Virus record (IMG/VR): IMGVR_UViG_3300025162_000016
Span: 304,759-368,758 of that record
Length of the DNA: 64,000 nt
Reading direction: 5' to 3' (one strand)
In this document: positions 23,967-54,617 of the stretch, piece after piece
Layout of the letters: every line of letters starts with the position of its first letter
How positions within the stretch are numbered: position 1 is the first letter of the stretch
Notes under the pieces: model-generated
Seen by the model: the letters and a program-made list of their open reading frames with translations, nothing else
Databases searched by the model: none
Told to the model about the DNA's origin: nothing
Translations under genes and position numbers: made by a program

Positions 23967-25294
23967 AATTTTTGGAGGAAGGAAACCCCGACGGCTTTAG
24001 CCTCGGGGAGGAATTCCGACCATTCTTAACATTCTACACCAACCACCTCAATTTGTCAACCACAAAAATATTTTAACTTTTTCGATGTTTTTGATATTTT
24101 CATCACTATGTATTGTGTAGTAATGATAACATATAATACCAAACTGAAATTTGAGAAACAAGAAGATTTCAATAATCTCCTTGAATCTCTCAAATTAAAT
24201 CAATCGGCTTGGAATATCATAAGTCAAGAAAGATTTTCTATGACCGGTGGAATATTGAAAATTCTTCACGACAAATGTTATTATAAAGTTAAAAAAGCCC
24301 TGCCAACTATTCCATCGCAGTTTATCATTAAAGCGGAACAAGATGTCATTGCTACTTACAAAACAATTAAATCCAATAAACATAAACTTGATTCTCCCGC
24401 TACAAAAAAGAATTTATCCATTCAATTAGATAAAAGAATCTACAAGTGGATAGACAAAACACACTTAAAAATCACCACATTAAATAAACAAGCAATTGTG
24501 TCGTTTGATGTATATGAAAAGTTAAATGAATTAGATTTTTCCAAATTAAAAGACCCCAAATTATTTTTCAAAAATGGGAATTTCTATCTAAGTTTGATTT
24601 TCGATATTCAGCTTCCGTTTATTGATAATAATAAAATCGTAGGAATTGATGTAGGATTAAAAAGATTAATTTCCACGAGTGAAGGAAATATTGTTAAAGG
24701 CAATGAATTCAATGGGCATAAACGTAAAATTCGTTGGAATAAAAGAAAATTTCAATCTAAAAAGCACTCACATTCAGCGAGAACAAATCGTAAGAAACTC
24801 AGAAAAAAAGAAGCAAATTTTAGTAGAAATTATATACATAATGTTACTAAAAATGTAATTCTAAATACCAATGCAAATATTTTAGTGATAGAAGATTTAA
24901 GTAAAATTAAAAGTAAAAATAAAGGTAAACGATTCAATAATAGATTAAGTCAATTACCATTTTTCGCATTCAGAACTATATTAACATACAAGGCACAACT
25001 TTACGGAAAAAAAGTTGCAACAGTTAACCCCGCCTTTACAAGCCAAATAGATCATAGAGGTTTAGTTGGTGGAAAAAGAAGGGGATGTAGATATTATGGT
25101 TCGGACAATGTAGTATTAGATGCGGATGTAAATGCCGCAATCAATATTGCTAACAGATATGTAGACAATTTGAGTTTACATAAACACTCCGTTTTGTGTT
25201 GCAAAGCACTGGATGGACAGGCTGCGGTCAATCAGCCAATCGTCGGAAGTTCTTTCCGGCAAGCCCCTATCCCTTTAGGGTAGGGGTTGTTGAC
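23967..25294 (+). mobile_element. IS605/IS1341-type element (tnpB only)
   Basis: Left hairpin CCCCGA..TCGGGG, right hairpin CCCCTATCCCTTTAGGGTAGGGG-TTGTTGAC; TTCAT precedes the left end. Confidence 0.8.
24108..25283 (+). CDS. tnpB: TnpB RNA-guided nuclease (Zn-finger-less variant)
   Basis: VGIDVG, VIEDL, DADVNAAINI. Confidence 0.9.
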   Translation: MYCVVMITYNTKLKFEKQEDFNNLLESLKLNQSAWNIISQERFSMTGGILKILHDKCYYKVKKALPTIPSQFIIKAEQDVIATYKTIKSNKHKLDSPATKKNLSIQLDKRIYKWIDKTHLKITTLNKQAIVSFDVYEKLNELDFSKLKDPKLFFKNGNFYLSLIFDIQLPFIDNNKIVGIDVGLKRLISTSEGNIVKGNEFNGHKRKIRWNKRKFQSKKHSHSARTNRKKLRKKEANFSRNYIHNVTKNVILNTNANILVIEDLSKIKSKNKGKRFNNRLSQLPFFAFRTILTYKAQLYGKKVATVNPAFTSQIDHRGLVGGKRRGCRYYGSDNVVLDADVNAAINIANRYVDNLSLHKHSVLCCKALDGQAAVNQPIVGSSFRQAPIPLG

Positions 25295-28305: not shown

Positions 28306-29152
28306 GGTGAAGTGCTGGAACAGACCAGTTACTATATCACCCAATGATCCAACCGCAAACTTTATAAACTGTTGTGTTGGGTGAAGTGCTGGAACAGACC
28401 AGTTACTATATCACCAATATTACTACGTCGTATTTATATATCGAATGATAATGTTGGTGAAGTGCTGGAACAGACCAGTTACTATATCACCCAAGTCTAT
28501 CCATGCAACCTAATACATATCGTTGTGAGGTGAAGTGCTGGAACAGACCAGTTACTATATCACCGGAGAGAGATAAACCTCTACATGGTATGGTTCGGCC
28601 AGTGTGGTGAAGTGCTGGAACAGACCAGTTACTATATCACCTTCCCATATTCTTCGGAGTTACTCGAATTATCCGAGGTGAAGTGCTGGAACAGACCAGT
28701 TACTATATCACCTGTATGTGGTAACTTTTGTTCCTATAGCATCAACAAGGTGAAGTGCTGGAACAGACCAGTTACTATATCACCGTCAACAGTTGACATA
28801 CCTTGAATTCCCGGCGCTGTTGGTGAAGTGCTGGAACAGACCAGTTACTATATCACCTAATGATCCAACCGCAAACTTTATAAACTGTTGTGTTGGGTGA
28901 AGTGCTGGAACAGACCAGTTACTATATCACCAATATTACTACGTCGTATTTATATATCGAATGATAATGTTGGTGAAGTGCTGGAACAGACCAGTTACTA
29001 TATCACCTAGCATACTGGTATGATAGGATCTAAGAAGTAATCTTGGTGAAGTGCTGGAACAGACCAGTTACTATATCACCGACCATCGAGGGGATAACCG
29101 ACACGATTGACCTTACGGCGAATTACTGGAACAGACCAGTCACTATATCGCC
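28306..29152 (+). CRISPR. CRISPR array 2: 12 repeats, 11 spacers
   Basis: 36-bp repeats, 35-41-nt spacers; terminal variant GGCGAATTACTGGAACAGACCAGTCACTATATCGCC. Confidence 0.98.
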
Positions 29153-29179
29153 GCACCTTATAAAATATACGAAAAAAAT

Positions 29180-29389
29180 ATGAAAAAGAAATCTACAAAA
29201 AAAGTTTCAACATTACCCACCGCAGCGGAGGTTTTGAATATTGAAGGAATATATCTTCCTTTAGAAACCGCCAATGTATTATATGCATATTTTCATGCAT
29301 TTTTAGCAAAAGGGTTTACTCAAGAACAATCATTTAAACTCACGGAAAGAATAGCCGGATTTTATTTTAGGTCATCGCCTCTATCCTAA
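29180..29389 (+). CDS. Hypothetical protein
   Basis: KGFTQEQSF motif. Confidence 0.55.
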   Translation: MKKKSTKKVSTLPTAAEVLNIEGIYLPLETANVLYAYFHAFLAKGFTQEQSFKLTERIAGFYFRSSPLS

Positions 29390-29425
29390 CCAAATAGGCT
29401 AGAGTAATATCATTCTCCAAAAATT

Positions 29426-29626
29426 ATGAACATGCATGTACCAGAAGAAATTAGATTGAAATATCCACAGATGGAGTTTCGTGGAAAACAACGGAAGTTG
29501 CATAATCGTACCATGATTGATGCGGAAAATCATCAGACCGGGATGAGTTTCTACTATTCTTTTGAGGAAGATTTCTTCTGGTTCAAAAATTGTGAAATTC
29601 CCGATTGGTTCATAAAAAAAGAATAA
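29426..29626 (+). CDS. Hypothetical protein
   Basis: Operon order. Confidence 0.6.
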   Translation: MNMHVPEEIRLKYPQMEFRGKQRKLHNRTMIDAENHQTGMSFYYSFEEDFFWFKNCEIPDWFIKKE

Positions 29627-29629
29627 AAT

Positions 29630-29932
29630 ATGGAAATCAAAACTAAACTCATTGCAAACACAAATCTTCTTCGTGGTTATGGATGTGGTTATATTGGTGT
29701 TCCCAAAGGTCATCTGTGGCATGGAATGGAGTATGATGATCTACGTGACGTTGATGTTCATGGTGGGCTAACATGGAGCGATAATTATATTCGTGGCGAT
29801 GAAGAGGCCGGTTGGTGGTGGGTTGGATTCGACACTTCTCACAGTGGAGATGATCAGATCAATTGTGATGAAAATTATTGTAATGAGCAAATTAAGAAAC
29901 TTAAACAACAAGCATTGAAAGTTATTGTATGA
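29630..29932 (+). CDS. Conserved phage hypothetical protein
   Basis: CGYIGVP..H, VHGGLTW, WWVGFDT.H motifs. Confidence 0.75.
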   Translation: MEIKTKLIANTNLLRGYGCGYIGVPKGHLWHGMEYDDLRDVDVHGGLTWSDNYIRGDEEAGWWWVGFDTSHSGDDQINCDENYCNEQIKKLKQQALKVIV

Positions 29933-30159
29933 CTGTAAAACAATTAATTGAAAAATTAGGTGAGTATGATCCTGAGATGCCGGTTATGAGTAATGGATAT
30001 GAGGGTGGTTTGAATGATATTGATTCATTTGAAAAACGTGATGTGGTGCTTAATTATCACGAAGCATGGTATTATGGTAAACACGAAAGCGTTGATGGGA
30101 TTCATGGGGAAGGTGATGCTTTGAAAAACACTACGGTTAAAGCATTGATCATCGCATAA
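29929..30159 (+). CDS. Hypothetical protein
   Basis: MTVKQLIEKL..YDPEMPV...GYEGG; ATGA overlap. Confidence 0.7.
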   Translation: MTVKQLIEKLGEYDPEMPVMSNGYEGGLNDIDSFEKRDVVLNYHEAWYYGKHESVDGIHGEGDALKNTTVKALIIA

Positions 30160-30162
30160 AAT

Positions 30163-30987
30163 ATGAAATGTACATGGATAGTAGAAAATTTTGTTAAAGA
30201 ACAGTCGTTTAAAGGTCTTATAGAAGCCGTTAAATCGCTTAATTATCCTTTATTGGAGATTAAAGGTGATTACACAAAATCGACATTAGATCAAATAACG
30301 AGTAAGTGTGTTATGTTGAACGGGTCGATTAAAATGGTTAAGCTAGTTAAACAAGACCTTCCATCCGATTGTTATCCTGTAGTTTATTGTAATTTTGAGA
30401 AATACAAATGTTCCTCGTATTATTCTCATTTCGGGTCATATTTGTTTAATGATAAATATTGTATGATGTCATTGAAGGAGTTGGGGAGACAGAAGTTTGA
30501 TGTGTGGGGTCATTATGGGAAGGATGCTTTAATATTTATTCGTCCCGATTCAGGGGAGAAAACTTTTCAAGCGGGATTATTAGATATTATTGATGTGGAT
30601 ACTCTTAATGAATCGAATAAAGAGTATGAACATGAAATGGTATTGGTATCCACTCCCAAAACCATTATATGGGAAGGTCGGTTTGTGGTATCAAGGTTCA
30701 AAGAAATAATTGCATCTTCCACCTACAGATTTCAAGGACAAGTAAGCTTGATTCCGAGCGTACCAACTGAGACAACCAAGTTTTGCAAAGAATTGTTGGA
30801 TAAAACAGATTATAACCCGGACTCGGTTTTTTGTATGGATTTATGTCAGGACAGTGATAAAAACGTGTGGCTTCTTGAGTTAACTAGTTTTTCGAGTGCG
30901 GGTTTGTATGCTACTGACAAGGTTCAGATTGTAAAACGGGTTTCGGAAATTGCTGAGGAAGAGTATAAAAAATATGAAAATTGCTGA
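30163..30987 (+). CDS. ATP-grasp domain protein (DUF4343/R2K-like)
   Basis: FIRP....K.F, E.RFVV, MD....LLEL..FSSAGLY. Confidence 0.75.
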   Translation: MKCTWIVENFVKEQSFKGLIEAVKSLNYPLLEIKGDYTKSTLDQITSKCVMLNGSIKMVKLVKQDLPSDCYPVVYCNFEKYKCSSYYSHFGSYLFNDKYCMMSLKELGRQKFDVWGHYGKDALIFIRPDSGEKTFQAGLLDIIDVDTLNESNKEYEHEMVLVSTPKTIIWEGRFVVSRFKEIIASSTYRFQGQVSLIPSVPTETTKFCKELLDKTDYNPDSVFCMDLCQDSDKNVWLLELTSFSSAGLYATDKVQIVKRVSEIAEEEYKKYENC

Positions 30988-31189
30988 ATTTGTAGAACTA
31001 TGTGTGTGGGATGCTGATCGAGCAGCGAATTTTCCAACGATGATTAATTTAGCAAAGGTTTCTCAAATTGCGTCATGTGGTGAAAGAAAGTTTACCAGAA
31101 TAATTTTTGAGAATCAAACAGAAATCATAATTAATGGAAAATTTGATGCGGTTAAAATGGAGATAAAACATCAATTGGAATCCGAATGA
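30974..31189 (+). CDS. Hypothetical protein
   Basis: Overlapping operon ORF. Confidence 0.55.
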   Translation: MKIAEFVELCVWDADRAANFPTMINLAKVSQIASCGERKFTRIIFENQTEIIINGKFDAVKMEIKHQLESE

Positions 31190-31392
31190 GAATATTAATA
31201 GAATTTGAAGTGACTGGATGTAAGTCGCAGGACGAAGCCAAAGAGAGTGGGAAAGAGTGGGTTAGGAATAATAATATCACAGTCAAATATGGTGAATGTG
31301 AATTAACTCCTACGGGAGATGTTTTTGACTTTCAACCGTTTGGTGATACAATATGGAAAAAATATTATGACGACTACTATAAAGAATATTAA
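31186..31392 (+). CDS. Hypothetical protein
   Basis: ATGA overlap. Confidence 0.55.
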   Translation: MRILIEFEVTGCKSQDEAKESGKEWVRNNNITVKYGECELTPTGDVFDFQPFGDTIWKKYYDDYYKEY

Positions 31393-31849
31393 GATTACTC
31401 AAAGCATTCAGTGGACATGTAGGAGATGGGGTGGTGTATTTTTAGGATTACGGATTAATTTTCCTGTGACCATCACTGATTACGATGGTAAAAATAATAA
31501 TTCCGTATGGCGGCACATTTTCATTGGACTAGGCTTTTTCTTTTTCACATGGAATATTGATATTGATTATAATTTCCGGGATGAGCCGGTGAAATAATAA
31601 CCGTTGACTTTCTATAAACTTCGTGGTAGTATTTGAACATGACCGATCAAGAGATTAATATTACAATTGCGGAATTGATGGGAATTCCAATGGAAGGTTC
31701 GTGGTGTGAACATTGGGGTAAGATAGCTAGTTGCAGTGCAAAACAACAAGCTATCGCTTTTTTAAGAGTTAAGGGAATAAAGATTTGACTTTCTATAAAA
31801 TTCGTGGTAGTATAACAAAAAAGTAAAAATAAAAGTATAACAAAAAAAT

Positions 31850-32161
31850 ATGATTAAAGAACTAACAAAAGAACAGAGTGATAAGTTTGGTGAGTATGTC
31901 AAGGTATGGACCGAGAAGGGGTTGACCACCCAACGGCAAACAGAAAGCGATGCTAAGATTGATTTCTGGAATTTTCAAAAGCACATTCTCAAGAAAGAAA
32001 ATCCGGCACCAGTAATTATTTTAGATTCACCGCTAAAATGTTGGATGGCGGTAGTGATGTCGTCCGCCATGAAGAGTTTGCCGGCAGAAAAAATTCAGAA
32101 AAATGTGATGGATAAGATCACGCCTGTAGTGGGCAAACTCTCTGTAAAACATGAAAACTAA
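31850..32161 (+). CDS. Stand-alone N-terminal module of DUF6745-type proteins
   Basis: MIKELTKEQ...Y...W...GL.T....P.IILDSP; own promoter. Confidence 0.65.
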   Translation: MIKELTKEQSDKFGEYVKVWTEKGLTTQRQTESDAKIDFWNFQKHILKKENPAPVIILDSPLKCWMAVVMSSAMKSLPAEKIQKNVMDKITPVVGKLSVKHEN

Positions 32162-32364
32162 AACAACTAAGGAAATTAAAACTAAACTTCCTAAAACTAA
32201 AGTAGTCAACTATACAGTTGATCCTGAACAGGGGTCTATGTTCTTGGCATACGCTGCCCCAAAAGAATACGCCGTTAAATCCATTGATCGTAAAGGAAAA
32301 AAAGCGACGGTCACATATATTATATAAGCACGTTGAATTCTGAGTTCGTGACCGCTAGAATTAC

Positions 32365-34814
32365 ATGAATAATAAATTAATTAATGATCAAATTTATTTA
32401 CAAGTTGAGGATCAAATTAGATCACAAGTGCTGTCACAAGTTGAGTTACAAGTTTGGTCACAAGTCTATTCACAAGTCTATTCACAAATTCGGTCACAAG
32501 TTAGTTCACAAGTCTGGTCACTAGTTAAGTCACAAGTTGAGTCACCGGTTTGGTCACAAGTTGAGTCACAAGTGCGTCAACACGTTAGAAATGAGCTAAG
32601 ATCAAATGAGCATTAAATTAATTATGGATCAAGTTTGGTCGCAAGTTAGGCATCAAATCGAGTCACAAATTTGGGATCAAGTCTGGTCACAAGTTCAGTT
32701 ACAAGTCTATTCACAAGTCTATTTGCAAGTTGCGTTACAAGTTCTGAATAAAGTTAGGTCACAAGTTGCGGATCAATTGCGGTCACAATTAGAATCAAAT
32801 AAATTATAAAGTAATGCGAGGGACAACATAAAAATGGATTTTCCGGATCAAGTAATATTACAAGAGATGGGTAAAATAATGGGACGAGTTGAGTCACAAA
32901 TTGCGTCACAAGTTAGGTCACAAGTTTCGTCACAAGTTGCGAACCAAATTCAGTCACAGATGATGTCACAAATTCGGAATCAAATAGATAAATAGTGATG
33001 TCTCAATTACAGTTACAAGTTCGGACTCAGGTAAGGCATCAACTTGAAAGGTTTCTAATGTATCCGATGGTGGTACAAACTGGAAGTTTAATATCTCAAG
33101 AAGTCAACAACCAAATAGAATCCCAAGTTGGGCGTAAAATATGGGAAACCGTGGAGTTGAACATAGCATATACAATGGAATTCCAAGTTAAAGAACAACT
33201 AGAATTACATGAATAATACATTAATTAATGATCAAGTCTGGTCACAAGTCTATTCACAAGTTTGGCAACAAGTTCGGAATCAAGTTAGTTCACAAGTCTA
33301 TTCACAAGTTGATTCACAAGTCTGTTCACAAGTTTGGGATCAAGCTGGGTCACAAGTGCGGTCACAAATTTGGGATCAAGTAGGGCAACAAATTAGAAAT
33401 GAGCTAAGATCAAATGAGTATTAAATTAATTAATGATCAAGTCACGTCACAAGTTCAGTCACAAATTTGGGATCGAGTTTGGGATCAAGTGATGTCCCAA
33501 GTTTCGTCACAAGTTAGCTCAGAAGTTTGGAAACAAGTCTGGTCACAAGTTGAGTCAGAAGTGGCAGAACAACTCTGGTCACAAGTCAAGGATCCAGTCT
33601 GGTCACAAGTTCGGTCACAACTAGAATTATATGAATAATAAATTAATTAATGATCAAATTTATTCACAAGTTTCGGTACAAGTTGAGGATCAAGTTTGGG
33701 CACAAGTGCTATCACCAGTTCAGTCACGAGTTTCGTCACAACTGATGTCACAAGTTGAGTCACAAGTTGTGGCACAAGTTTGGTATAAATTAATTAATGA
33801 TCAAATTTATTCACAAATTAGATCACAAGTCTATTCACAAGTTGAGTTACAAGTTGAGTTACAAGTGCGGTCACAAGTCTGGTCACAAGTTGATTCAGAA
33901 GTGCGGTCACAAGTTCGGGATCAAGTTAAGTTACAAGTTGCATCACAAGTTAGGTCACAAGTTGGGGATCAAGTTGGGGATCAAGTTGGGGATCAAGTGA
34001 TGTCCCAAGTTTCGTCACAAGTTAGCTCAGAAGTTTGGAAACAAGTCTGGTCACAAGTTGAGTCACAAGTCTGGTCACAAGTTCAATTAATTAATGATCA
34101 AATTTATTTACAAGTTGAGTCACAAGTCTGGTCACAAGTTAATTCACAAATTCGGTCACAAGTTAGTAATCAAGTTAGGTCACACGTTGCGGATCAATTG
34201 CGGTCACAACTAGAATTACATGAATAATAAATTAATTAATGATCAAATTTATTTACAAGTTGAGGATCAAATTAGATCACAAGTGCTGTCACAAGTTGAG
34301 TCACAAGTCTGGTCACAAGTTCGGCAAGTTGAAGCACAAGTTCGGAAACAAGTTGAGTCACAAGTTTATTCACAAGTCTATTCACAAGTGCTGTCACAAG
34401 TTGAGTCACAAGCCAATTCACAAGTCTGGTCACAAGTTGATTCAGAAGTGCGGGCACAAGTTCGGGATCAAGTTAAGTTACAAGTTGCATCACAAGTTAG
34501 GTCACAAGTTGGGGATCAAGCTGGGGATCAAGTTAGGCAACAAATTATAAATGAACTAAGGTCGCATGAATAATAAATTAATTAATGATCAAATTTATTT
34601 ACAAGTTGAGGATCAAATTAGATCACAAGTGCTGTCACGAGTTGAGAACCAAGTCTGGTCACAAGTTAAGGATCAAGTGGGGCAACAAGTCTGGTCACAA
34701 GTTCGGTTACAAGTTGCGTTACAAGTTAGGGATCAAGTTAGATCACAAGTCTATTCACAAATTCGGTCACAAGTTAGGTTACAAATTTTGTCACAAGTTC
34801 AATCACAATTATAA
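32365..34814 (+). repeat. Block 1 of Gln/Val/Ser-rich (QVxS)n short ORFs (~9 ORFs)
   Basis: 12-bp unit TCACAAGTNNNN; most ORFs start MNNKLINDQ/MSIKLI and end LELHE/LRSNE. Confidence 0.9.
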
Positions 34815-34862
34815 GTGTTGACTTTCTATAAATCCTCTGATAGTATTGGAGGAGTGGAATAA

Positions 34863-35867
34863 ATGAATGTTCAGGATCAAATACATAAAAATGTGTGGTG
34901 TCCGTACGCCGAGGTTTCGGAAAACGTGCCACTTATTATCACATATCATATCGCATTTATATGTGATCAAATAGATAATTCAGTAAGATTTCAAGTAGCT
35001 AACCCACTTGAACTACAAATAAATAATCAAATTAAAAAAGAAACAACAGAAAATATGAATGAAATAGCTAAAGAAATGAATACCGATACGAATGATAAAA
35101 TCCGGGATCAAATTGTAGCCAATATATTGTCTCAACTAAAATCAAAAGTGACGGATGATGAAACCGAAATCGGGAATCAAGTAAAACTCGAAGTGGCAGA
35201 AGAAATCAAATCACATATTATGGCTCAAATGACATCAGAAGACAACAAATTCGTATATCCCTACTTCGATTGCCAGTTCTGGGCATCTTGGTTCAGTTTC
35301 TATGAATTTATGAAGACTGAACTAGGTATTGAATTCCCGAATGAAAAGGAATATAATATCCTCAAAGATTGTCAGAAATATGGCATGGTATTTCCTTTGG
35401 ATGACCTTTGTGTCGTATGTCAGCCGCCGACAATTATTAAAAAGAATAATTCAGGGTTGCACTGTGAGAATGGTCCGGCACTCAGTTATAACGGAGACAA
35501 CGAGATATTTGCATTGAACGGGGTGGTAATGCCTAAAGAATATGTATTAACTCCTGCTAGAGATATTACCGCAGAGACGGTTATGAAGGAGACCAATGTA
35601 GAGATTCGCCGGGAATTACTTAGGAAGGTAGGTATTGAGCGGCTAATGAATGATTTGCCACATAAACTGTTGGAGACCCGTGGTAACTACGAATTGTATA
35701 GTATTGATCTAAGTAATGAAATTAAAGATGCACGTTATCTGAAAATGCAGAACCCATCCATCGGAGTTTTTCATTTGGAGGGACTAGCTCCTGGTATTAA
35801 TACAATTGAGGAAGCTCTTAAATGGAGGAATAATAATTTGTTTGTTGACGCCGAAATTCTAACGTAA
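34863..35867 (+). CDS. DUF6745-type protein
   Basis: W.SFYEF, LHCENGPAL.Y....FALNGV, ETNVEIRRE....GIER, L.M.NPS; own promoter at 34818-34846. Confidence 0.75.
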   Translation: MNVQDQIHKNVWCPYAEVSENVPLIITYHIAFICDQIDNSVRFQVANPLELQINNQIKKETTENMNEIAKEMNTDTNDKIRDQIVANILSQLKSKVTDDETEIGNQVKLEVAEEIKSHIMAQMTSEDNKFVYPYFDCQFWASWFSFYEFMKTELGIEFPNEKEYNILKDCQKYGMVFPLDDLCVVCQPPTIIKKNNSGLHCENGPALSYNGDNEIFALNGVVMPKEYVLTPARDITAETVMKETNVEIRRELLRKVGIERLMNDLPHKLLETRGNYELYSIDLSNEIKDARYLKMQNPSIGVFHLEGLAPGINTIEEALKWRNNNLFVDAEILT

Positions 35868-35885
35868 ACCTAATGTTAAAACCTA

Positions 35886-38800
35886 ATGTTAAAGCTAATG
35901 ACACAAGTTGAGTCACAAGTTAGCTCACAAGTTTGGGATCAAGTTATGGATCAAGTTCGGTCACAAGTCTGGTCACAAGTTGCGTCACAAGTCTATTCAC
36001 AAGTTTGGAAGCAAGTTATGGATCAAGTTCGGTCACAAGTTGAGATTCAAGTGGGGCAACACGTTATAAATGAACTGGGGTCGAATGTATAATAAATTAA
36101 TTGATGATCAAGTTCGGTCACAAGTTAGGGATCGAGTTTGGAAACAAGTTGAGTTACAAGTTTCAACTCAAGTGTCGTCACAAGTTAGTTCAGAAGTGAG
36201 GTCGCAAATTTGGGATCAAGTTTGGAAACAAGTCTATTCACAAGTTCAGTCACACGTCTGGGATCAAGTCGAAGCACAAGTTCGGAATCAACTTCGGTTA
36301 CAACTAGAATTACATGAATGATATAATTAGATATCAAATTAGGGATCGAGTTAGGTCACAAGTTGTGGATCAAGTCTGGTCACAAGTTTCGGCACAAGTT
36401 GATTCAGAAGTGAGGTCGCAAGTTTGGGATCAAGTGATGTTACAAGTTCAGTCACAAGTTGCGAACCAAATTCGGTCACAACTAGAATCACATGAACATT
36501 AATAAATTAATTAATGATCAAGTCTGTTTACAAGTTTGGGATCGAGTTAGGTCGCAAGTTTCGTCACAAGTTACGTTACAAGTCACGTCACAAGTTGAGG
36601 ATCAAGTGATGTCCCAAGTTCAGTCACAAGTTCAGTCACAAGTCTATTCACAAGTCACGTCACAAGTTCAGTCACAAGTTTGGGATCGAATTAGGTCACA
36701 AGTTCAGTCACGAGTTGCGTCACAAGTCTGGTCACAAGTTGAGTTACAAGTCACGTCACAAGTTGTGTTACAAGTTCGGAATCAAGTTAAATCACAAGTG
36801 CGGTCACAACTAGAATTACATGAATGATATAATTAAATATCAAATTAGGGATCGAGTTAGGTCACAAGTTGCGGATCAAGTTCGTTCACAAGTCTGGTCA
36901 CAAGTTAGGTCACAAGTTCTGAATAAAGTTAGGTCACACGTTGCGGCACAAGTTGGGGTAAAAGTTGGGGTGAAAGTTGAGTCACAAATTAGGGATCAAG
37001 TTATGAATCAAGTTAGGTCACAAGTTAGTGATCAAGTTGCGACACAAGTGCGGACACAAGTGCAGAATCAAGTGCGGTCACAACTAGAATTACATGAATG
37101 ATATAATTAAAAACCAAATTCTTGATCAAGTTAGGTCACAAGTTGAGAACAAAGTCTGGTCACAAGTTAGGGATCAAGCTTGGGCACAAGTCACGTCACA
37201 AGTTAGGGATCAAGTCTGGTCACAAGTTGGGTCACAAGTTGGGGCACAAGTTCGGTCACAAGTTCGGGTACAAGTAGCTGAACAAGTTGGGTCACAAGTT
37301 GGGTCACAAGTTGGGGCACAAGTTCGGTCACAAGTTCGGGTACAAGTAGCTGAACAAGTTGGGTCACAACTAGAATTACATGAATGATATAATTAAATAT
37401 CAAATTTTTGATCGAGTTAGGTTACAAGTGCAGGATCAAGTTTGGTCACAAGTTGACGTTCAAATTTGGGATCAAATCTGGTTACAGGTAATGTCACAAG
37501 TGTTGTTACAAGTTGAGTTACAAGTTCGGAATCAAGTAATTAATCAAGTTCAGTTACAAGTGATGACTCCATTGATAAAACGAATGGATGAACATGTGGA
37601 TGATCAAGTTTGGACCCACGTTTGGAATCAAATTGGGTTACAAGTGGCACAGCAAATTCAATCCCAAGTCAGAAATCAAGTTAGGTCACAACTCGAATCA
37701 CATGAATAATCTAATTAGATACCAAATTAGATCACAAGTTGATTCACAAGTGCGGTCACAAGTTATAACACTCTGGTCCCAAGTTACGTCACAAGTGCGG
37801 CCACAAGTCTGTTCACAAGTTTTGGATCAAGTTGCGTCACAAGTTCGGTCACAAGTGTGGTCACAAGTTAGTGATCAAGTTGCGACACAAGTTGGGGCAC
37901 AAGTTCGGAATCAAGTAATGTTACAACTCGAATCACATGAATAATCTACTTAAAAACCAAATTTGGGATCAAGTTGAGGCACAAGTTGAGTTGCAAGTGG
38001 GATATCAAATTTGGGATCAAGTTAGGTCACGAGTTGAGTCACTAATGATGTTACAAGTTCGGAAACAAGTTGAGTCACAAGTTTATTCACAAATTCGGTC
38101 ACAAGTTAGGGATCAAGTGGGGCAACAAGTTCAGTCACAAGTCTGGTCACAAGTTATGTCACAACTAGAATCACATGAATGATATAATAAGGAATAAAAT
38201 TGGGAAACAAGTTCTGGTACAAGTGATGTCCCAAGTTGATGAACAAGTTAGTTCACAAGTTAGGGATCAAGTCTGGTCACAAGTTAAGTCACAAGTCTAT
38301 TCACAAGTCTATTCACAAGTTGAGGATCAAGTTAGTTCACAAGTCTATTTGCAAGTTGAGTTACAAGTCTATTCACAAGTCACGTCACAAGTTAGGTCAC
38401 AAGTTATGTCACAAGTCTGTTCACAAGTTAGGGATAAAGTAATGTTACAACTCGAATCACATGAATAATCTACTTAAAAACCAAATTTGGGATCAAGTTG
38501 AGGCACAAGTTTGGAATCGAGTTAGGTCACAAGTTCGGAATAAAGTTAAGTTACAAGTTGCATCACAAGTCTGGTCACAAGTTCGGAATCAAGTAATGTT
38601 ACAAGTCTGGGATCAAGTGCGGTCACACGTTTCGTCACAACTCGAATCACATGAATAATCTACTTAAAAACCAAATTTGGGATCAAGTATGGTCGCAAGT
38701 CACGTCACAAGTTCTGTTACCTGTGATGTCCCAAGTTGATGAACAGGTTGGGGTTCAAATCTGGTCACAAGCTAAGTCACAAGTTGAGTCGGAAGTGGCA

Positions 38801-41800
38801 GAACAAGTCTGGTCACAAGTTCGGAATCAAGTAATGTTACAACTCGAATCACATGAATAATCTACTTAAAAACCAAATTTGGGATCAAGTTGAGGCACAA
38901 GTTGAGTTGCAAGTGGGGGATCAAATTTGGGATCGAGTTAGGTCACGAGTTGAGTCACTAATGATGTTACAAATTTGGGATCGAGTTAGGTCACGAGTTG
39001 AGAACCAAGTCTGGTCGCAAGTTAAGGATCAAGTGGGGCAACAAGTTATAAATGAACTAAGGTCGCATGAATAATAAATTAATTAATGATCAAGTTTGGA
39101 ATCAAGTTAGGCAACAAGTCTATTCACAAGTTGAGTTACAAGTTGAGTTACAAGTGCGGTCACAAGTTGGGCAACAAGTTAGGGATCAAGTCTTGATACA
39201 AATCCGGTTACAAATTTGGTCACAGATTCAGTTACAAGTTCGGTCACAAGTCGAGTCAGAAGTAGCAAAACAAGTGTGGTCACAAATTAGAAATCACGTT
39301 ATGTCACAATTAGAATCACATGAATGATATAATAACGAATAAAATCGGGAAACAAGTTCAGTCACAAGTTTGGCAACAAGTTGAGTACCCAATGTTGAAA
39401 CACCTCGTATCACAAGTTACGTCAAGAGGTCGGGATAAAGTTAGGCAACAAGTTAGTAATCAAGTCTGGTCACAAATTAAGTCACAGGTCAATTCACAAG
39501 TTCAGTCACGAGTTGCGTCACAAGTCTGGTCACAAGTCCGGTTACAAGTTTCGTCACAAGTCTGGTTACAAATTTGGCAACAAGTTATAAATGAACTAAT
39601 ATCGCATGAATAATATAATAACGAATAAAATCGGGAAACAAGTTCAGTCACAAGTTAGTTCACAAGTCTGGTCACAACTAGAATTACATGAATAATCAAA
39701 TTAAAGATCAAATTTGGGGTCGAGTTTTGTCACAAGTTTCAGCACAACTTCACCTAATTGATGCTCAAGTCTGGTCACAAGTTAGGTCACAAGTTGAGAA
39801 CCAAGTCTGGTCACAAGTTTCGTCACAAGTTATGTTAAAAGTTGAGTCACAAGTTGAGTCACAAGTTATAAATGAACTGGGGTCGCATGAATAATAAATT
39901 AATTAATGATCAAGTCTGGTCACAAGACTATTCACACATCTATTCACAAGTTCCGTTACGAGTTTGGGTTCAAGTCTGGTCACAAGTCCGGGATCAAGTT
40001 CGGAAACAAGTCTGGCAAGTTGAGGATCAAGTTACGTCACAAGTTTCGTCACAAGTTTGGGATCGAGTCTGGTCACAAGTTCAGTCACAAGCCAATTCAC
40101 AAGTTGAGGCTCAAGTTCGTTCACAAGTCTGGTCACAAGTTATGTCACAAGTTACGTCACAAGTTGATGAACAAGTCTGGTCACAAGTTCGGGATCAAGT
40201 GATGTTACAAGTTCAGTCACGAGTTGCGTCACAAATCTGGTCACAAGTCTGGTCACCAGTCGGGGCACAAGTTTCGTCACAAGTTAGCTCACAAGTTAGC
40301 TCACAAGTTTGGCAACAAGTTGAACAAGTTAGCTCACAAGTTCCGTCACAAATTAGGTCGCACGTTGAGTTACAAGTTAGGAACCGAGTTATAAATGAAC
40401 TAAGATCGCATGAATAATAAATTAATTAATGAACAAGTCTGGTCACAAACTTGGGATCAAGTTGCGGCACAAGTTGTGGATCAAGTTAACTCACAAGTTA
40501 TGTTAAAAGTTGAGTCGGAAGTGGCAGAACAAGTCTGGTCACAAGTTCGGAATCAAATTATGTCACAAGTCTATTCACAAGTTGCGTTACAAGTGCAGGA
40601 TCAAGTTAGTTCACAAGTTAGGAATCAAGTTTGGGATCGAGTAATGTTACAAGTTCGGAATAAAGTTAAGTCACAAGTTCAGTCGCAAGTTTGGGATCGA
40701 GTAATGTTACAAGTTGCGTCACAAGTTATAAATGAACTGGGATCGAATGTATAATAAATTAATTAATGATCAAGTCTGGTTACAAGTTTGGGATCGAGTT
40801 AGGTCGCAAGTTAGTTCACAAATTTGGGATCGAGTCTGGTCACAAGTTAAGTCACAAGTTGCGGCACAAGTTGATTCACAAGTGCGGTCACAAGTAAATA
40901 GTCAAGTTATAGCACAAATTAGAAATAAGCTAAGATCAAATGAGTATTAAATTAATTGATGATCAAGTCTGGTCACAAGTTCAACCAGAAATTTGGGATC
41001 GAGTTAAATCGCCAATGGTGAAACATCTAGTATCACAAGTCACATTACAAGTCACGTTACAAGTTGAGTCACAAGTTATGTCACAAGTTTGGCAACAAAT
41101 TTGGCAACAAGTTTCGTCACAAGTTCGGTCACAACTAGAATCACATGAATAATACATTAATTAATGATCAAGTTTGGCAACAAGTTAGCTCACAAGTTTG
41201 GCAACAAGTTGAACAAGTTAGCTCACAAGTTGCGTCACAGGTTTCGTCACAAGTCAAGGATCCAGTCTGGTCACAAGTTCGGTCACAACTAGAATTATAT
41301 GAATAATAAATTAATTAATGATCACTTTTGGGATCAAGTCTGGTCACAGGTGATATCACAAGCTTCGTTACAAATTGAGTTACAAGTTAGCTCACAAGTT
41401 ATATCACAAGTCGGGTCACAAGTTCGGTCACAAGTTTGGAAGCAAGTTCAGTCACAAGTTAGTAATCAAGTTAGGCAACAAATTATAAATGAACTGGGGT
41501 CGAATGTATAATAAATTAATTAATGATCAAGTTTGGAATCAAGTTAGGCAACAAGTCTATTCACAAGTTGATTCACAAGTTGCGGCACAAATAAATAATC
41601 AGATTAAGTCACAAGTTCAGAATCAAGTTGCGTCACAAGTTTGGAAGCAAGTTCAGTCACAAGTTAGTAATCAAGTTATAGCACAAATTAGAAATGAACT
41701 GGGGTCGAATGTATAATAAATTAATTAATGATCAAGTCTATTCACAAGTGCTGTCACAAGTTTGGGAGCAAGTTGCGTCACAAATAAATAATCAGATTAA

Positions 41801-44800
41801 GTCACAAGTTCAGAATCAAGTGATAGCACAAGTCACGTCACAAGTTTGGGATCAAGTTTCAAATCAAGTTTTGGAACGAATTATATCTCAAGTTTCGGAA
41901 CAAGTTTCGGAACAAGTTGAGTTATACGTTTTGGATCAAGTTAGAGCACATGTAGTGAGTAAACTTTGGGTAAGTAAATAATCAAATATATAATAACTTG
42001 TTACGAATTATGAAGGAGAAAATGATATATCAAGTGTCGAGGGACGTGCAGAATCAAGTGCGGGATAAGGTTTGGAATCAAGTTGAGTTACACGTTTTGG
42101 ATCAAATTTCGTCACAAGTCAATTCACAAGTCAATTCACAAGTCTGGTCACAAGTCTGGTCACAAGTCTGGTCACAAGTGGGGGATCAAGTTCGGTCACA
42201 ATTAGAATCACATGAATAATAAATTAGTTAATGATAAAATCTGGTCACAAATTTGGGATCGAATTAGGTCACAAGTTCAGTCACGAGTTAGCTCACAAGT
42301 TAGCTCACAAGTTTGGCAACAAGTTATGAATCGAGTTACGTCACAAGTTAATGATCAAGTCTATTCACAAGTTATGTCACAAATTTGGGATCGAGTCACG
42401 TCACAAGTTGAGGATCAAGTTGCGGCACAAGTTCGGTCACAACTAGAATTACATGAATAATAATAAATTAGTTAATGATCAAGTCTATTCACAAGTTATG
42501 TCACAAGTTGAGTCACAAGTTTCAACTCAAGTGTCGTCACAAGTTGAGTTGGAAGTTGTGTTACAAGTTGCGGTACGAGTTAGTTCACAAGTTAGGAATC
42601 AAGTTTGGGATCGAGTTAGTTCACAAGTTAGGAATCAAGTTTTGGATCGAGTTAGGTCACAAGTTGATTACCCAATGATGAAACACCTCCTATCACAAGT
42701 TACGTCACAAGTTAGGTCACAAGTTAGGTCACAAGTCTATTCACAAGTCCGGTCACAAGTTAGCTCGGAAGTTTGGAAACAAGTTTCGTCACAAATAGCA
42801 GAACAAGTGCGGTCACAATTAGAATTACATGAATGATATAACTAACTATCAAATTTGGGTTCAAGTTAAGTCACAAGTCTGGTCACAAGTTAAGTCACAA
42901 GTTGAGGATCAAGCTTGGGCACAAGTCACGTCACAAGTAGCAGAACAAGTTTGGGATCAAGTCTGGTCACAAGTTCGGAATCAAATCACGTTACAAGTCA
43001 ATTCACAAGTAGCAGAACAAGTAGCAGAACAAGTGCGGTCACAAATATCTTCCAATGGACAATTTATATAATCAAGTTCAGTCACAAGTTGCATCCCACG
43101 TTGATTCCCAAGTCTGGTCACAAGTTTCAACTCAAGTCTCGTCACAAGTTGAATTAGAAGTGAGGTCGCAAGTCTATTCACAAATTGAGGATCAAGTTCG
43201 TTCACAAGTCAATTCACAAGTTGCGTCACAAGTAGCAGAACAAGTGCGGTCACAAATATCTTCCAATGGACAATTTATATAATCAAATTATTGATCAAGT
43301 TGAGTTACACGTTTTGGATCAAGTTTCGTCACAAGTCTGGTCACAAGTCTGGTCACAAGTCTGGTCACAAGTTGATTCAGAAGTGCGGTCACAAGTTCTG
43401 AATAAAGTTAGGTCACAAGTTTCGTCACAAGTTTGGGATCAAGTTTGGTCACAAGTTAGGGATCAAGTGATGTTACAAGTTTCGTCACAAGTTTGGGATC
43501 AAGTGATGTTACAAGTTGCGTTACAAGTTCTGAATAAAGTTAGGTCACAAGTTGCGGATCAATTGCGGCACAATTAGAATCAAATAAATTATAAAGTAAT
43601 GCGAGGGACAACATAAAAATGGATTTTCCGGATCAAGTAATATTACAAGAGATGGGTAAAATAATGGGACGAGTTAGGTCACAAGTTGCGGATCAAGTTC
43701 GGTCACAAGTGAGGACACAAGTTTGGGATCAAGTTTGGAATCGACTTATTAAAGCTGGTGGATCACAAGTTAAATCAGAAATTGAGTCACAAATATCTTC
43801 CAATGAACAATTTATATAAACAAGTTCAGTCACAAGTAGCAGAACAAGTGCGGTCACAAGTTGATTCACAAGTTGCGACACAAGTTCGAATTCAAATCAA
43901 TTCACAAGTTACGTCACAAGTCTATTCACAAGTTGCGGATCAAGTTTCGGAACAAGTCTGGTCACAAGTCTGGTCACAAGTTTCGCCACAAGTCCATTCA
44001 CAAGTATGGTCACAAGTTCGGTTACAAGTTGCGTTACAAGTTTGGGATCAAGTTAGATCACACGTTGCGGCACAAGTCTATTCACAAGTGCTGTCACAAA
44101 TTAGAGATCAAGTTATAAATAAGCTAAGATCACATGAATAATACATTAATTAATTATCAAACCTATTCACAAGTTTGGGATCGAGTGAGGGGACACGTTG
44201 CGGATCAAATAATGTTACAAGTGATGACTCCATTGATAAAACGAATGGATGAACAAGTTGCGTCACAAGTTTCGTCACAAATTTCGTCACAAGTCACGTC
44301 ACAAAATGAATTTGGGTCGCATGAATAATAGATTAATTAAAGACCAAATCGAGTCACAAATCTATTCACAAGTCACGTCACAAGTTAGGGATCAAGTCTG
44401 GTCACAAGTCACGTCACAAGTAGCAGAACAAGTGAGGTCACAAGTCTGTTCACAAGTTCGAATTCAAGTTAGGTCACAAGTTGCGTTACAAGTTGAGTTA
44501 CAAGTTCGGTTACAAGTAAATGAGCAGATTCGGAATCAAGTTGCGGCACAAGTTATAAATGAACTGGGGTCGAATGTATAATAAATTAATTAAAGACCAA
44601 ATCGAGTCACAAGTTTGGCGACAAGTTGAAGCACAAATCGAGTCACAGGTGGTATACCCAATGTTCGGACACCTCGTATCACAAATTGCGTCACAAGTTT
44701 CATCTCAAGTTATGTCACGAGTTGAGCCACAAGTTAGGACACAAGTGAATGAGCATGTTGCGGATCAATTGCGGTCACAATTAGAATTACATGAATAATA

Positions 44801-45196
44801 AATTAGTTAATGATCAAGTCTATTCACAAGTTTCGACTCAAGTTTCGGAACAAGTCTGGTCACACGTTGTGTCACAAGTTTCGTCACAAGTTGATGATCA
44901 AGTTTGGGATCAAGTTAGATCACACGTTGCGGCACAAGTTAGTTCACAAGTTCGGTCACAACTAGAATTACATGAATAATAATCGAATTATTGATCAAGT
45001 TTCGACTCAAGTTTGGTCACAAGTTTGGGATCAAGTTGAGTCACAAGTTAGCTCACAAGTCTGGTCACAAGTTCGGTTACAAGTTGCGTTACAAGTTAGG
45101 AATCAAGTTTGGTCACAAGTTGCGGCACAAGTTAAGGAAAATGTTGAATCACAAATTAGAAGCCACCTCGCCCGCTCTATTTTGTTTGTTGACTAG
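35886..45196 (+). repeat. Block 2 of (QVxS)n short ORFs (~38 ORFs, ~30-180 aa, mostly overlapping)
   Basis: Successive ORFs mostly joined by 8- or 11-nt start/stop overlaps (ATGAATAA, ATGAATGA, ATGTATAA, ATGAGTATTAA). Confidence 0.9.
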
Positions 45197-48096: not shown

Positions 48097-48246
48097 ATGA
48101 AAACACCTATATATACAAAAATTGCACAGCGAAACTGGATGGAAAAGCGAAAGAAAGCGGGATATTGCTGGGCTACTTTCTTTACCACCAAGGAGAACGT
48201 AGCTAAATTAAAGGAGTTCTACGCTGAACTCAAAAAGTCCAAATGA
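48097..48246 (+). CDS. Small basic TnpB-associated protein (49 aa, not in track)
   Basis: MKTPIYTKIAQRNWMEKRKKAG...KLKEFYAEL; ATGA overlap with 48243. Confidence 0.65.
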   Translation: MKTPIYTKIAQRNWMEKRKKAGYCWATFFTTKENVAKLKEFYAELKKSK

Positions 48247-52418: not shown

Positions 52419-52640
52419 ATGCTTAAAAAAGTTATATATCGAATTTCAGAACGAGTTATAGATCAAGTCTATTTACGAGTTGGGGCACAAGTTCAGAATC
52501 AAGTTGAGTCACAAGTCTGGTCACAAGTTGAGTCACAAGTTCAGTCACAAGTTAAAGAGCAAGTTATGTCACAAGTTGAGGGTCAAGTTTGGGTACAAGT
52601 CAGGGATAAAATTATGGCTCAGATTCATAGTCAGATTTAG
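52419..52640 (+). CDS. Isolated (QVxS)n short ORF
   Basis: Same tetrapeptide repeat as at 32-45 kb. Confidence 0.75.
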   Translation: MLKKVIYRISERVIDQVYLRVGAQVQNQVESQVWSQVESQVQSQVKEQVMSQVEGQVWVQVRDKIMAQIHSQI

Positions 52641-52964: not shown

Positions 52965-53300
52965 ATGAATAAAAACAGAAATACAGCAAAAATTAATGCA
53001 CAGCAGGGTGATGTAATTCTAAAACGTCTCACGGCTCTCCCATCCGGCGAAGCAAAGCTAATTTCTAAAGGCAAATTGGTCCTTGCGGATGGGGAAAGTA
53101 CCGGGCATTATCACGGATTATTTGAAGAAAACAGTGAATTGCGTCAGTACGGCAACACAATGGTCCTCGATCTAAAAGAGGAAGCGACATTGACTCATCA
53201 AGAGCATGGACCGATTACCTTGGAGCCGGGGTTGTGGGAAGTTGGCAAGGTTCAGGAGTATGATTATTTTGCTCAAATGAAGCGTCCGGTGATGGATTAA
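52965..53300 (+). CDS. QGDV/TGH.H beta-rich protein, usual partner of DUF6745 genes
   Basis: QQGDVIL..LVLADGESTGHYH..LTHQEHGPITL.PG.W.V...QEYD. Confidence 0.75.
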   Translation: MNKNRNTAKINAQQGDVILKRLTALPSGEAKLISKGKLVLADGESTGHYHGLFEENSELRQYGNTMVLDLKEEATLTHQEHGPITLEPGLWEVGKVQEYDYFAQMKRPVMD

Positions 53301-54586: not shown

Positions 54587-54617
54587 ATGTTTTTAGAAAC
54601 TAAATTTCGACTGTGAT

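What the first reader, a model, noticed from the sequence alone, without database searches (positions are those of the whole stretch)
31850..35867. Split DUF6745-type gene whose internal Q-rich linker appears to have been externalised
From my recall of the family, DUF6745 proteins run N-domain (LT.EQ...W....DSP), then a low-complexity QV.. repeat, then W..FY / LH...GPA domain, and lie next to a QGDV..TGH.H gene. Here the N-domain (31850-32161) and C-domain (34863-35867, own promoter, only vestigial Q-pattern) are separate genes. The repeat segment exists as dozens of free ORFs. The QGDV partner (52965-53300) lies 17 kb away, close to one more QVxS ORF (52419-52640). Inference: a modular complex in which the variable part is supplied in trans.
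Basis: partly seen in the sequence, partly recalled or inferred. Interest (0 to 1): 0.75.

Follow-up and report, generated by a model that had tools for sequence, protein, structure and literature searches.

The report
Split phage gene amid tetrad-repeat genes
In a 369-kb lake-water jumbo phage, a conserved phage gene of unknown function (DUF6745) is naturally cut in two at its variable repeat, and around the halves lie 47 tandem small genes that encode the same four-residue repeat as free proteins.

Summary
ORF 31850-32161 aligns to the N-terminus of single-chain DUF6745 proteins (62% identity, E 1e-25). Residues 130-334 of ORF 34863-35867 align to their C-terminus (79% identity, E 5e-133; Pfam PF20530, 50.5 bits). 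The single-chain relatives carry 0 to about 68 (S-Q-V/L-x) units exactly where this gene is cut.

The split was assembled independently on at least 24 contigs from several samples. Both halves keep the family's near-invariant residues. Each is preceded by the same promoter-like element, and the halves are predicted to reassemble (ipSAE 0.74, best control 0.01).

Forty-seven small genes (32365-45196) encode free tetrad-repeat proteins with their own heads, tails and stop/start overlaps. They are coding: 0 stop codons at the hypervariable codon against about 47 expected, and synonymous variation at Val.

The "externalised linker" reading is only partly supported. Similar free arrays sit beside unsplit DUF6745 genes in other phages, and the C half keeps its own decayed linker. 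An expanding neighbouring gene family most likely broke the gene by recombination. The QGDV partner, adjacent in 58 of 66 related loci, lies 17 kb away here. The function is unknown, the fold has no PDB relative, and supply of the variable part in trans is untested.

The parts
31785..31813 (+). Promoter-like element (TTGACT, 17 nt, TAGTAT with TG) upstream of the N ORF. A further copy lies at 31604-31632.
   Evidence: the 15-nt core occurs only 3 times in the 369-kb genome.
31850..32161 (+). N half of the split DUF6745 gene (103 aa): N-domain in residues 1-68, then a short tail.
   Evidence: E 1e-25 to P0017 1-67; the near-invariant family residues are all kept; exact sequence on at least 24 contigs; single copy.
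32151..32327 (+). 58-aa ORF with no known relatives. It overlaps the stop of the N ORF and is part of the DNA that separates the halves.
   Evidence: no family hit; present in all independent contigs.
32365..34814 (+). Array part A: 9 tandem small genes that encode free tetrad-repeat (x-Q-V-x) proteins, between the two halves.
   Evidence: coordinates, heads, tails, overlaps; coding signature; order reproduced in independent assemblies.
34818..34846 (+). Third copy of the promoter-like element, followed by GGAGGAG at 34849-34855, ahead of the C ORF.
34863..35867 (+). C half of the split DUF6745 gene (334 aa): residues 1-129 are a decayed tetrad linker, residues 130-334 the conserved C-domain.
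   Evidence: PF20530, 50.5 bits; E 5e-133; lag-4 periodicity, z 5.5; contigs from two studies, 0 differences; 98% identical copy with the same layout in L002.
35886..45196 (+). Array part B: 38 further tandem tetrad-repeat genes. Across the whole array, 41 of 46 junctions are stop/start overlaps, 34 of them the 8-nt ATGNATAA type.
   Evidence: The order beyond about 38.2 kb rests on this assembly alone.
52419..52640 (+). Lone diverged tetrad-repeat ORF (73 aa) just upstream of the partner.
   Evidence: about 50% identical to array members.
52965..53300 (+). Partner gene (111 aa; QQGDV, GESTGHYH and HQEH motifs), normally adjacent to DUF6745.
   Evidence: alignable to the L004 107-aa gene; adjacent in 58 of 66 loci; phrog_27831; structural match to part of a 366-aa DUF6745 cluster.

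Best explanation
This is a naturally split DUF6745 gene embedded in a hugely expanded family of stand-alone tetrad-repeat genes.

Shown:
- Single-chain DUF6745 proteins consist of an N part of about 75 residues, an optional (x-Q-V/L-x)n insert of very variable length, and a C part of 205 residues.
- Here the N part and the C part are separate, intact, single-copy genes. Each sits behind a copy of the same promoter-like element.
- The 2.7 kb between them holds a 58-aa ORF and 9 members of a 47-gene tandem family.
- The family members are protein-coding. Q and V are under purifying selection and x is hypervariable.

Inferred:
- The two halves are co-expressed and reassemble non-covalently into the one compact fold of the family. 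The cut lies in the loop between two helices from which the repeat emerges. AlphaFold models the repeat, at low confidence, as a helical hairpin stalk.
- The small genes are free-standing versions of that stalk. They are translated by termination-reinitiation through their 8-nt stop/start overlaps.
- The family expanded by unequal recombination, like a gene accordion. Recombination between the gene's own repeat DNA and the neighbouring array broke the gene and pushed its partner 17 kb away.

The biochemical role of the DUF6745/partner module is unknown. My working guess is a host-interaction (arms-race) module in which the repeat rods present variable surfaces.
For: - Alignments: the two ORFs match the two ends of single-chain homologues, and those homologues have repeats at that exact site.
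- Integrity: the near-invariant N-part residues of the family are all present in the N ORF.
- Independent support: at least 24 contigs carry the same layout, colinear at 99.99-100%, and contigs from two studies match.
- Promoter: the same promoter-like 15-mer occurs only before the 51-aa ORF, the N ORF and the C ORF.
- Fold: AlphaFold2 of the unsplit homologue P0017 gives one compact fold (pLDDT 91.5, pTM 0.80).
- Reassembly: in the complex prediction the N ORF scores ipSAE 0.74 against a best control of 0.01. That mark was reached by 51 of 78 solved complexes and 2 of 108 mismatched pairs. The interface covers N residues 2-72 and C residues 134-213.
- Stalk: the repeat of P0003 is modelled as the hairpin H79-125 / H131-173.
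- Coding signature of the array: 0 TAG/TAA/TGA at the variable codon against 36.8 + 3.9 + 6.8 expected. Entropy at Val third base is 1.40 bits against 0.30-0.66 at bases 1 and 2.
- Protein-level conservation across lineages: Ser is encoded by TCA, TCG, TCT or AGC, and the hydrophobic residue by GTT, GTC, CTC, CTA, CTT or TTG.
- Free arrays beside unsplit genes: L006 and L008.
- Array-length differences between samples.
- Partner adjacency in 58 of 66 loci.
Against: - No expression or binding data exist, and no RNA run was listed.
- The complex score may only reflect that the two chains come from one fold, so it shows compatibility, not binding.
- The stalk model has pLDDT 51-62, and a four-residue period does not fit a canonical coiled coil.
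- The array is fragmented in short-read contigs with many repeat joints, so copy number and order beyond about 38 kb are uncertain.
- The unusual 17-kb separation from the partner could instead signal decay of the module.
- The recombination scenario is inferred from layout alone.
Confidence: 0.6

Rival explanations
1. One reading: a modular complex in which the small tetrad-repeat proteins are supplied in trans. They would take the place of the internal linker between the N and C halves and give combinatorial variability.
For: The N and C halves are predicted to bind. The free proteins carry the same repeat as the internal linker. Their x position is hypervariable. The weak similarity of the C ORF head to array members (E 2e-7 to 9e-4) could allow pairing.
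Against: Free arrays also accompany unsplit DUF6745 genes, so they are not a substitute for a lost linker. The C ORF keeps its own linker. Repeat-less family members are common, so the linker is dispensable for the fold. No interaction of a small ORF with N or C was scored.
Confidence: 0.2
2. A decaying locus: the DUF6745 gene was destroyed by runaway expansion of a selfish minisatellite-like gene array. The two halves would be non-functional remnants.
For: The partner is displaced by 17 kb, whereas it is adjacent in 58 of 66 loci. The linker in the C ORF head is degenerate. A TnpB-like element lies nearby.
Against: Both halves are full-length open frames that retain the near-invariant residues. 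The C-domain is 79% identical to that of an unsplit relative. The N ORF is identical across many samples and years. Both halves have a promoter-like element, and the C half also a GGAGGAG site.
Confidence: 0.13
3. The array is one giant gene read through by programmed +1 frameshifting at every junction, not 47 genes.
For: The frame advances by +1 at nearly every junction, and 34 of 46 junctions share the same 8-nt overlap.
Against: Every unit starts with ATG and has a conserved head directly after it. Stop/start overlaps of this kind are ordinary translational coupling. The arrays in L006 use 4-nt ATGA overlaps instead.
Confidence: 0.03
4. The 12-bp periodic DNA works as DNA or RNA (a satellite, a protein-binding array or DGR-type variable DNA), and the ORFs are incidental.
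For: Ten of the 12 nucleotides are nearly fixed. TCA makes up 94% of Ser codons against 20% genome-wide, and G is the third base of the x codon against 15% genome-wide. The genome does encode a DGR.
Against: No stop codon occurs at the variable codon against about 47 expected. The synonymous site of Val is variable. Other lineages encode the same peptide with different codons, including AGC for Ser. The DGR template shares no 12-mer with the array, and its changes are adenine-specific.
Confidence: 0.02
5. Assembly artefact: repeats misjoined by a short-read assembler created an apparent split.
For: Short-read contigs break and cross-join inside the array.
Against: The same layout is found in ENA, JGI and Logan assemblies of different samples. 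The unique junctions from the array into the C ORF (34748-35900) are covered without a mismatch in two studies.
Confidence: 0.02

Closest known systems
Pfam DUF6745 (PF20530) single-chain proteins, for example Microcystis phage Ma-LMM01 gp174 (YP_851188.1) and Mycobacterium phage prophiGD102-1 gp38 (QSM05137.1)
   Same: They have the same N part and C-domain. gp38 has about 50 x-Q-L-x units at the same site. The QGDV-type partner is adjacent (gp175 and gp37).
   Different: Those proteins are single chains with the partner next door and no free repeat genes. Here the gene is in two pieces, the partner is 17 kb away, and 47 free repeat genes surround the pieces. None has a known function, and no paper in the searched library mentions DUF6745.
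Free tetrad-repeat ORF arrays beside unsplit DUF6745 in IMG/VR contigs (L006 = UViG_3300035187_001784; L008 = UViG_3300027573_000779)
   Same: They are tandem 60-85-aa ORFs with Q-V/I-x-x repeats, their own heads and tails and overlapping stops and starts, immediately upstream of DUF6745 plus partner.
   Different: Those arrays have 3 to 10 copies and the DUF6745 gene is intact. Here there are 47 copies and the array interrupts the gene.
Phage genes split by inserted DNA whose halves still work together (from my own knowledge: Aeromonas phage Aeh1 nrdA split by mobE; T4 topoisomerase genes 39 and 60)
   Same: A phage gene is cut by inserted DNA into two separately translated pieces that are expected to form one protein complex.
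   Different: The inserted DNA here is a repeat-gene array and not a homing endonuclease. Function of the reassembled product has not been shown.
Poxvirus gene accordions (from my own knowledge: K3L amplification under host pressure)
   Same: A small viral gene is amplified in tandem, with copy-number differences between close isolates.
   Different: The copies here are old and diverged and stably present across samples. No selective agent is known.
Pentapeptide-repeat proteins (Pfam PF00805)
   Same: They have a short-period repeat with a small residue at i-2, a polar residue at i-1 and a hydrophobic residue at i, the same order as S-Q-V.
   Different: The period here is 4, not 5. There is no Pfam hit, and the repeat is modelled as helix rather than beta-helix.

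Membership tests
DUF6745 (PF20530) | Match to the Pfam model above the gathering score | tested here: met
   C ORF: 50.5 bits against a cut-off of 27, E 2e-13. It is the only such match in the genome.
DUF6745 (PF20530) | N-terminal part (LT..Q...W...GLT...DSP..CW) on the same chain as the C-domain | tested here: not met
   The N part is present but on a separate ORF 2.7 kb upstream.
DUF6745 (PF20530) | QGDV / GE.TGH.H partner gene immediately adjacent | tested here: not met
   The partner is adjacent in 58 of 66 IMG/VR loci. Here it lies 17,098 nt downstream of the C ORF stop.
DUF6745 (PF20530) | Tetrad repeat (x-Q-V/L-x)n between the N and C parts (optional in the family) | tested here: met
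   A decayed form is present in C ORF residues 1-129 (lag-4 z 5.5). The pristine form is seen in relatives.
Diversity-generating retroelement target | Template repeat near a reverse transcriptase that matches the variable region, with adenine-specific differences | tested here: not met
   The genome has a DGR (RT, a TR at 116922-117026 and two VRs), but its TR shares no 12-mer with the array. The array varies at two positions with all four bases.
Pentapeptide repeat (PF00805) | Five-residue period and a match to the Pfam model | tested here: not met
   The period is 4. Pfam gives no hit at E below 1.
Known anti-phage defence or NCBIfam-named families | Profile match | tested here: not met
   There is no PADLOC or NCBIfam match for N, C, the partner or P0017. 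The small ORF gives only sub-threshold noise.
Any solved fold | Structural match of the DUF6745 model to a PDB chain | tested here: not met
   Foldseek best E 0.38. VIA-align wide best Z 4.1 over 63 residues. AlphaFold DB hits are other DUF6745 proteins, and some carry LRR or '17 kDa surface antigen' fusions.

The most novel reading that the evidence does not exclude
The phage runs a protein-level diversity system that is distinct from its DGR. A split DUF6745 scaffold (N plus C) would recruit any of about 47 free tetrad-repeat rods, each displaying a different column of hypervariable x residues. This would give a combinatorial set of surfaces aimed at host factors (defence proteins or receptors). 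The array would be kept diverse by unequal recombination.
Probability: 0.15. Interest if true: 0.85.

Novelty: new variant of a known kind. Interest (0 to 1): 0.62.

Why it matters
DUF6745 and its small partner form one of the more widespread two-gene modules of unknown function in phages. They occur in phages of cyanobacteria, in mycobacterial prophages, and in freshwater T4-like and jumbo phages.

This locus is a natural experiment on that module.
- It shows where the protein can be cut.
- It shows that the tetrad repeat also exists as a free-standing gene family.
- It shows that the family can grow to 3.5% of a jumbo-phage genome.

The locus also gives concrete reagents for a first functional study: an N/C pair to co-express, 47 natural repeat variants, and a partner that may bind metal. 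In addition it is an example of gene-family expansion breaking a neighbouring gene that carries the same repeat.

Tried and rejected
- Near-identical DNA in the GenBank phage collection: no match.
- The search for related loci with the single C-domain protein: nothing confirmed. An alignment query worked.
- Homology search with a small ORF (36820-37098): 149 candidates, none at E 0.001 or better, probably because of low-complexity scoring. The Atlas feature search gave only unnamed small viral clusters.
- Pfam, PHROG, PADLOC and NCBIfam on the N ORF, the 58-aa ORF and the small ORFs: nothing meaningful.
- PDB sequence search with the partner: nothing.
- Fold searches of the DUF6745 model against the PDB: no relative.
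- Literature: no paper mentions DUF6745, and two keyword searches found nothing relevant.
- DGR as the source of variability: rejected.
- Non-coding satellite: rejected.
- Assembly artefact: rejected.
- Other stand-alone N-domain ORFs: most short hits in the 1.84-billion-protein search stop inside the repeat at contig ends, so they are not evidence of further splits.
- C-only calls P0014 and P0015 could not be checked because no DNA was available.
- RNA runs: none was listed.
- My first codon script used a wrong regular expression and returned nothing. It was corrected.
Full report
**Setting.** The window is the last 64 kb of a 368,758-bp viral record with direct terminal repeats, that is, a jumbo phage. 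Lake-water and freshwater metagenome runs from two studies each hold at least 90% of the sampled words of the locus. Almost all genes in the window are on the + strand.

**The observation.**
- ORF 34863-35867 (334 aa) matches Pfam DUF6745 (PF20530) at 50.5 bits against a gathering score of 27. It is the only such match in the genome.
- A search of 5.8 billion proteins returned 153 relatives.
- The run length ranges from none to 56 in-register Q[VIL] pairs among the 120 listed, and reaches 68 in the IMG/VR locus L005.
- The window's ORF 31850-32161, residues 1-68, aligns to residues 1-67 of the repeat-less homologue P0017 (62% identity, E 1e-25). Residues 130-334 of the C ORF align to P0017 83-287 (79% identity, E 5e-133).
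The two ORFs do align to the two ends of single-chain relatives, and those relatives do have the repeat.

**Is the split real?**
- The exact 103-aa N product is recorded in 39 blocks of the assembly collection. The 24 contigs read include ENA, JGI and other assemblies. The six shown all carry the N ORF, the 58-aa ORF and the small ORFs, and the four that extend far enough continue into a 334-aa (or 313-aa as called) DUF6745 ORF followed by more small ORFs.
- L073 is colinear with window 29001-38161 with one mismatch. L074 is identical over 6.7 kb. L071 and L074 differ by a 100-nt insertion inside the array, and L072 by a rearrangement inside it.
- A more distant strain (L002, C ORF 98% identical) has the C ORF flanked by small ORFs on both sides, but with different units.
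- Logan contigs from two studies cover 34748-35900 without a difference. Inside the array, short-read contigs are 100-470 nt long and show many repeat joints.
- The split and the first 6 kb of the array are therefore solid. The exact order and copy number further on rest on this one assembly.

**State of the two halves.**
- Both are single-copy.
- The N ORF retains every near-invariant N-part residue of the family alignment (I2 L5 T6 Q9 K12 Y16 W20 G24 L25 T27 A35 F39 F42 L47 V S P).
- Residues 1-129 of the C ORF are a decayed tetrad repeat. Hydrophobic residues recur at lag 4 (22 pairs against 9.5 expected, z 5.5) and at lag 8 (z 3.9), unlike the C-domain control. This region also has weak similarity to array members (E 2e-7 to 9e-4).
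- The 15-mer TTGACTTTCTATAAA, part of a TTGACT-17-TAGTAT element with an extended -10 TG, occurs only three times in the 369-kb genome: before a 51-aa ORF (31604), before the N ORF (31785) and before the C ORF (34818). At the last site it is followed by GGAGGAG. This is a consensus match and not proof of promoter activity, but it fits co-regulation of the halves.

**Structure.**
- AlphaFold2 on an alignment of 50 mostly repeat-less relatives gives one compact fold for P0017 (pLDDT 91.5, pTM 0.80). A strand and helix of the N part (E54-57, H60-75) are followed, after a loop at residues 76-89, by H90-107.
- The repeat is inserted in that loop. In the repeat-bearing P0003 it is modelled as a helical hairpin (H79-125, H131-173), but only at pLDDT 51-62.
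- The fold has no relative in the PDB (Foldseek best E 0.38; VIA-align best Z 4.1). AlphaFold DB hits are other DUF6745 proteins, some fused to LRR or to '17 kDa surface antigen' regions.
- A complex prediction was run with C residues 121-334, one small ORF and the N ORF as the scored partner. It gave ipSAE 0.74 against a best control of 0.01. That mark was reached by 51 of 78 solved complexes and 2 of 108 mismatched pairs. About 150 confident contacts join N residues 2-72 and C residues 134-213.
- This supports the view that the halves can reassemble. It does not prove binding, and it says nothing about the small ORF.

**The small ORFs.**
- Between 32365 and 45196 there are 47 ORFs of 29-198 aa (mean 84), and all start with ATG.
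- Heads fall into a few classes (24 MNN.., 7 MND.., 5 MYN.., 3 MSI..), and so do tails (..ELHE, ..ESHE, ..GSNV, ..RSHE).
- Of the 46 junctions, 41 are stop/start overlaps. Thirty-four of these are the 8-nt ATGNATAA type, so the frame advances by one at each gene.
- A few long members contain internal head motifs, which means fused units.
- Outside this array the only tetrad ORF in the genome is 52419-52640.

**Are they coding?** Yes, on three counts.
1. At the hypervariable codon x, found with a frame-agnostic DNA pattern in 570 units, no stop codon occurs. Independent base frequencies predict 36.8 TAG, 3.9 TAA and 6.8 TGA, and TAT is common.
2. Conditional on the preceding unit, the next unit has Q in 83% and V/I/L in 95% of cases. 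The synonymous third base of Val has 1.40 bits of entropy against 0.66 and 0.30 at bases 1 and 2, while x1 and x2 are near maximal at 1.97 and 1.79 bits.
3. Across lineages the same peptide is written with different codons: TCG CAA GTC NNG, TCT CAA CTA NNT, AGC CAA GTC NNG, TCA CAG CTT NAC, TCG CAG TTG NNT.

Within a lineage the 12-nt unit is almost fixed except for two bases. Here TCA makes up 94% of Ser codons against 20% genome-wide, and G is the third base of x against 15% genome-wide. This is the mark of rapid turnover by slippage or unequal recombination. Repeat number differs among otherwise near-identical relatives (P0003, P0005, P0007, P0010, P0013).

**Externalised linker, or a parallel family?** Three facts speak against externalisation in the strict sense.
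- The free ORFs have their own heads, tails and coupling signals.
- The C ORF still has its own decayed linker.
- Free arrays exist next to unsplit DUF6745 genes. L006 has about ten 64-85-aa ORFs (heads MKRENLI.., tails ..LRNNL, 4-nt overlaps) directly upstream of a 352-aa DUF6745 gene and its partner. L008, from a 209-kb contig, has several Q-I/V-W ORFs upstream of a 339-aa DUF6745 gene and its partner.

Such arrays were seen in 3 of 66 IMG/VR loci (two lineages), so they are uncommon but recurrent. The simplest history is that a neighbouring free-repeat family expanded, and that recombination with the homologous repeat DNA inside the gene placed nine units and a 58-aa ORF into the linker.

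**The partner.**
- ORF 52965-53300 (motifs QQGDV, GESTGHYH, HQEH) aligns to the 107-aa gene that directly follows DUF6745 in L004.
- tblastn with six partner sequences finds a homologue immediately beside the DUF6745 gene in 58 of 66 loci.
- The same pairing holds in Ma-LMM01 (gp175/gp174) and in Mycobacterium phage prophiGD102-1 (gp37/gp38, the latter with about 50 x-Q-L-x units).
- A 366-aa DUF6745 cluster in the ESM Atlas matches a model of the partner's closest Atlas cluster at TM 0.77, which suggests fusions.
- In the window the partner is 17,098 nt from the C ORF stop. In between lie 38 array genes, a 7.2-kb stretch that includes a TnpB-like gene, the lone tetrad ORF and a 63-aa ORF. The lone ORF beside the partner suggests that the array once reached the partner.

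**Other explanations tested.**
- The genome encodes a genuine DGR about 190 kb upstream of the window: a reverse transcriptase, a 105-nt template and two variable regions with 14 of 15 differences at template adenines. Its template shares no 12-mer with the array, and the array's variable bases are not adenine-specific. The DGR does not explain the array.
- A read-through polyprotein made by serial +1 frameshifts is unlikely, given the ATG and the conserved head at every unit.
- A pseudogene reading is weakened by the intact, conserved, promoter-bearing halves, but it is not excluded.

**Function.** There is no family annotation, no defence-system match, no solved relative and no literature. 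My commitment is as follows.
- N and C form one protein non-covalently (probability about 0.7).
- The small genes are translated, stand-alone copies of the variable stalk (about 0.85 that they are translated).
- Whether they assemble with the N/C complex is open (about 0.2).
- The scale, diversity and turnover of the array point to a host-interaction role under changing selection. This is inference only.

**Verdict.** The locus is a new variant of a family known only as a DUF, and it offers a clear experimental route.

Noticed in passing
G000:C1:113638-118215 (outside the window, about 190 kb upstream): A complete diversity-generating retroelement: an RT ORF at 117217-118215, a 105-nt template repeat at 116922-117026, and two variable repeats at the 3' ends of paralogous ORFs 113638-115035 and 115120-116499. 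Fourteen of 15 differences lie at template adenines. A 116-aa ORF (116552-116902) lies between them.
   Followed up: partly
window 48243-49493 and 24108-25283: Two TnpB / Cas12f-like ORFs (the TNB domain in both; OrfB_IS605 and RuvC-like in the second-listed). The first-listed sits in the 7.2-kb stretch that separates the repeat-gene array from the partner gene.
   Followed up: no
window 57639-59357: A 572-aa ORF in which a papain-like peptidase C1 domain is interrupted by an intein that carries an HNH endonuclease.
   Followed up: no
window 31604-31632, 31785-31813, 34818-34846: A promoter-like element whose 15-nt core occurs only at these three places in the 369-kb genome. A related copy lies at genome position 279517.
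   Followed up: partly
window 54023-55766, 62193-63068, 30163-30987, 51964-52416: A ClpP-like protease followed by an AAA ATPase, a PstS-like phosphate-binding protein, an R2K-type ATP-grasp protein and a YopX protein.
   Followed up: no
G000:C1:120009-128570 (outside the window): A 2,853-aa ORF with extensive internal DNA repeats and related repeats scattered over 106-133 kb. It was seen only as BLAST self-hits.
   Followed up: no
proteins P0014, P0015 (T4-like contigs, no DNA available): C-domain-only DUF6745 gene calls (212 and 220 aa) that start inside the repeat, with the partner directly downstream. They may be further natural breaks or assembly frameshifts in the repeat.
   Followed up: partly
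proteins P0130, P0148, P0159, P0163, P0170: The linker of some DUF6745 relatives uses other tetrads (D-S-V-x, A-K-V-x, N-E-V-x). The constant feature is a hydrophobic residue at every fourth position, not the Gln.
   Followed up: no
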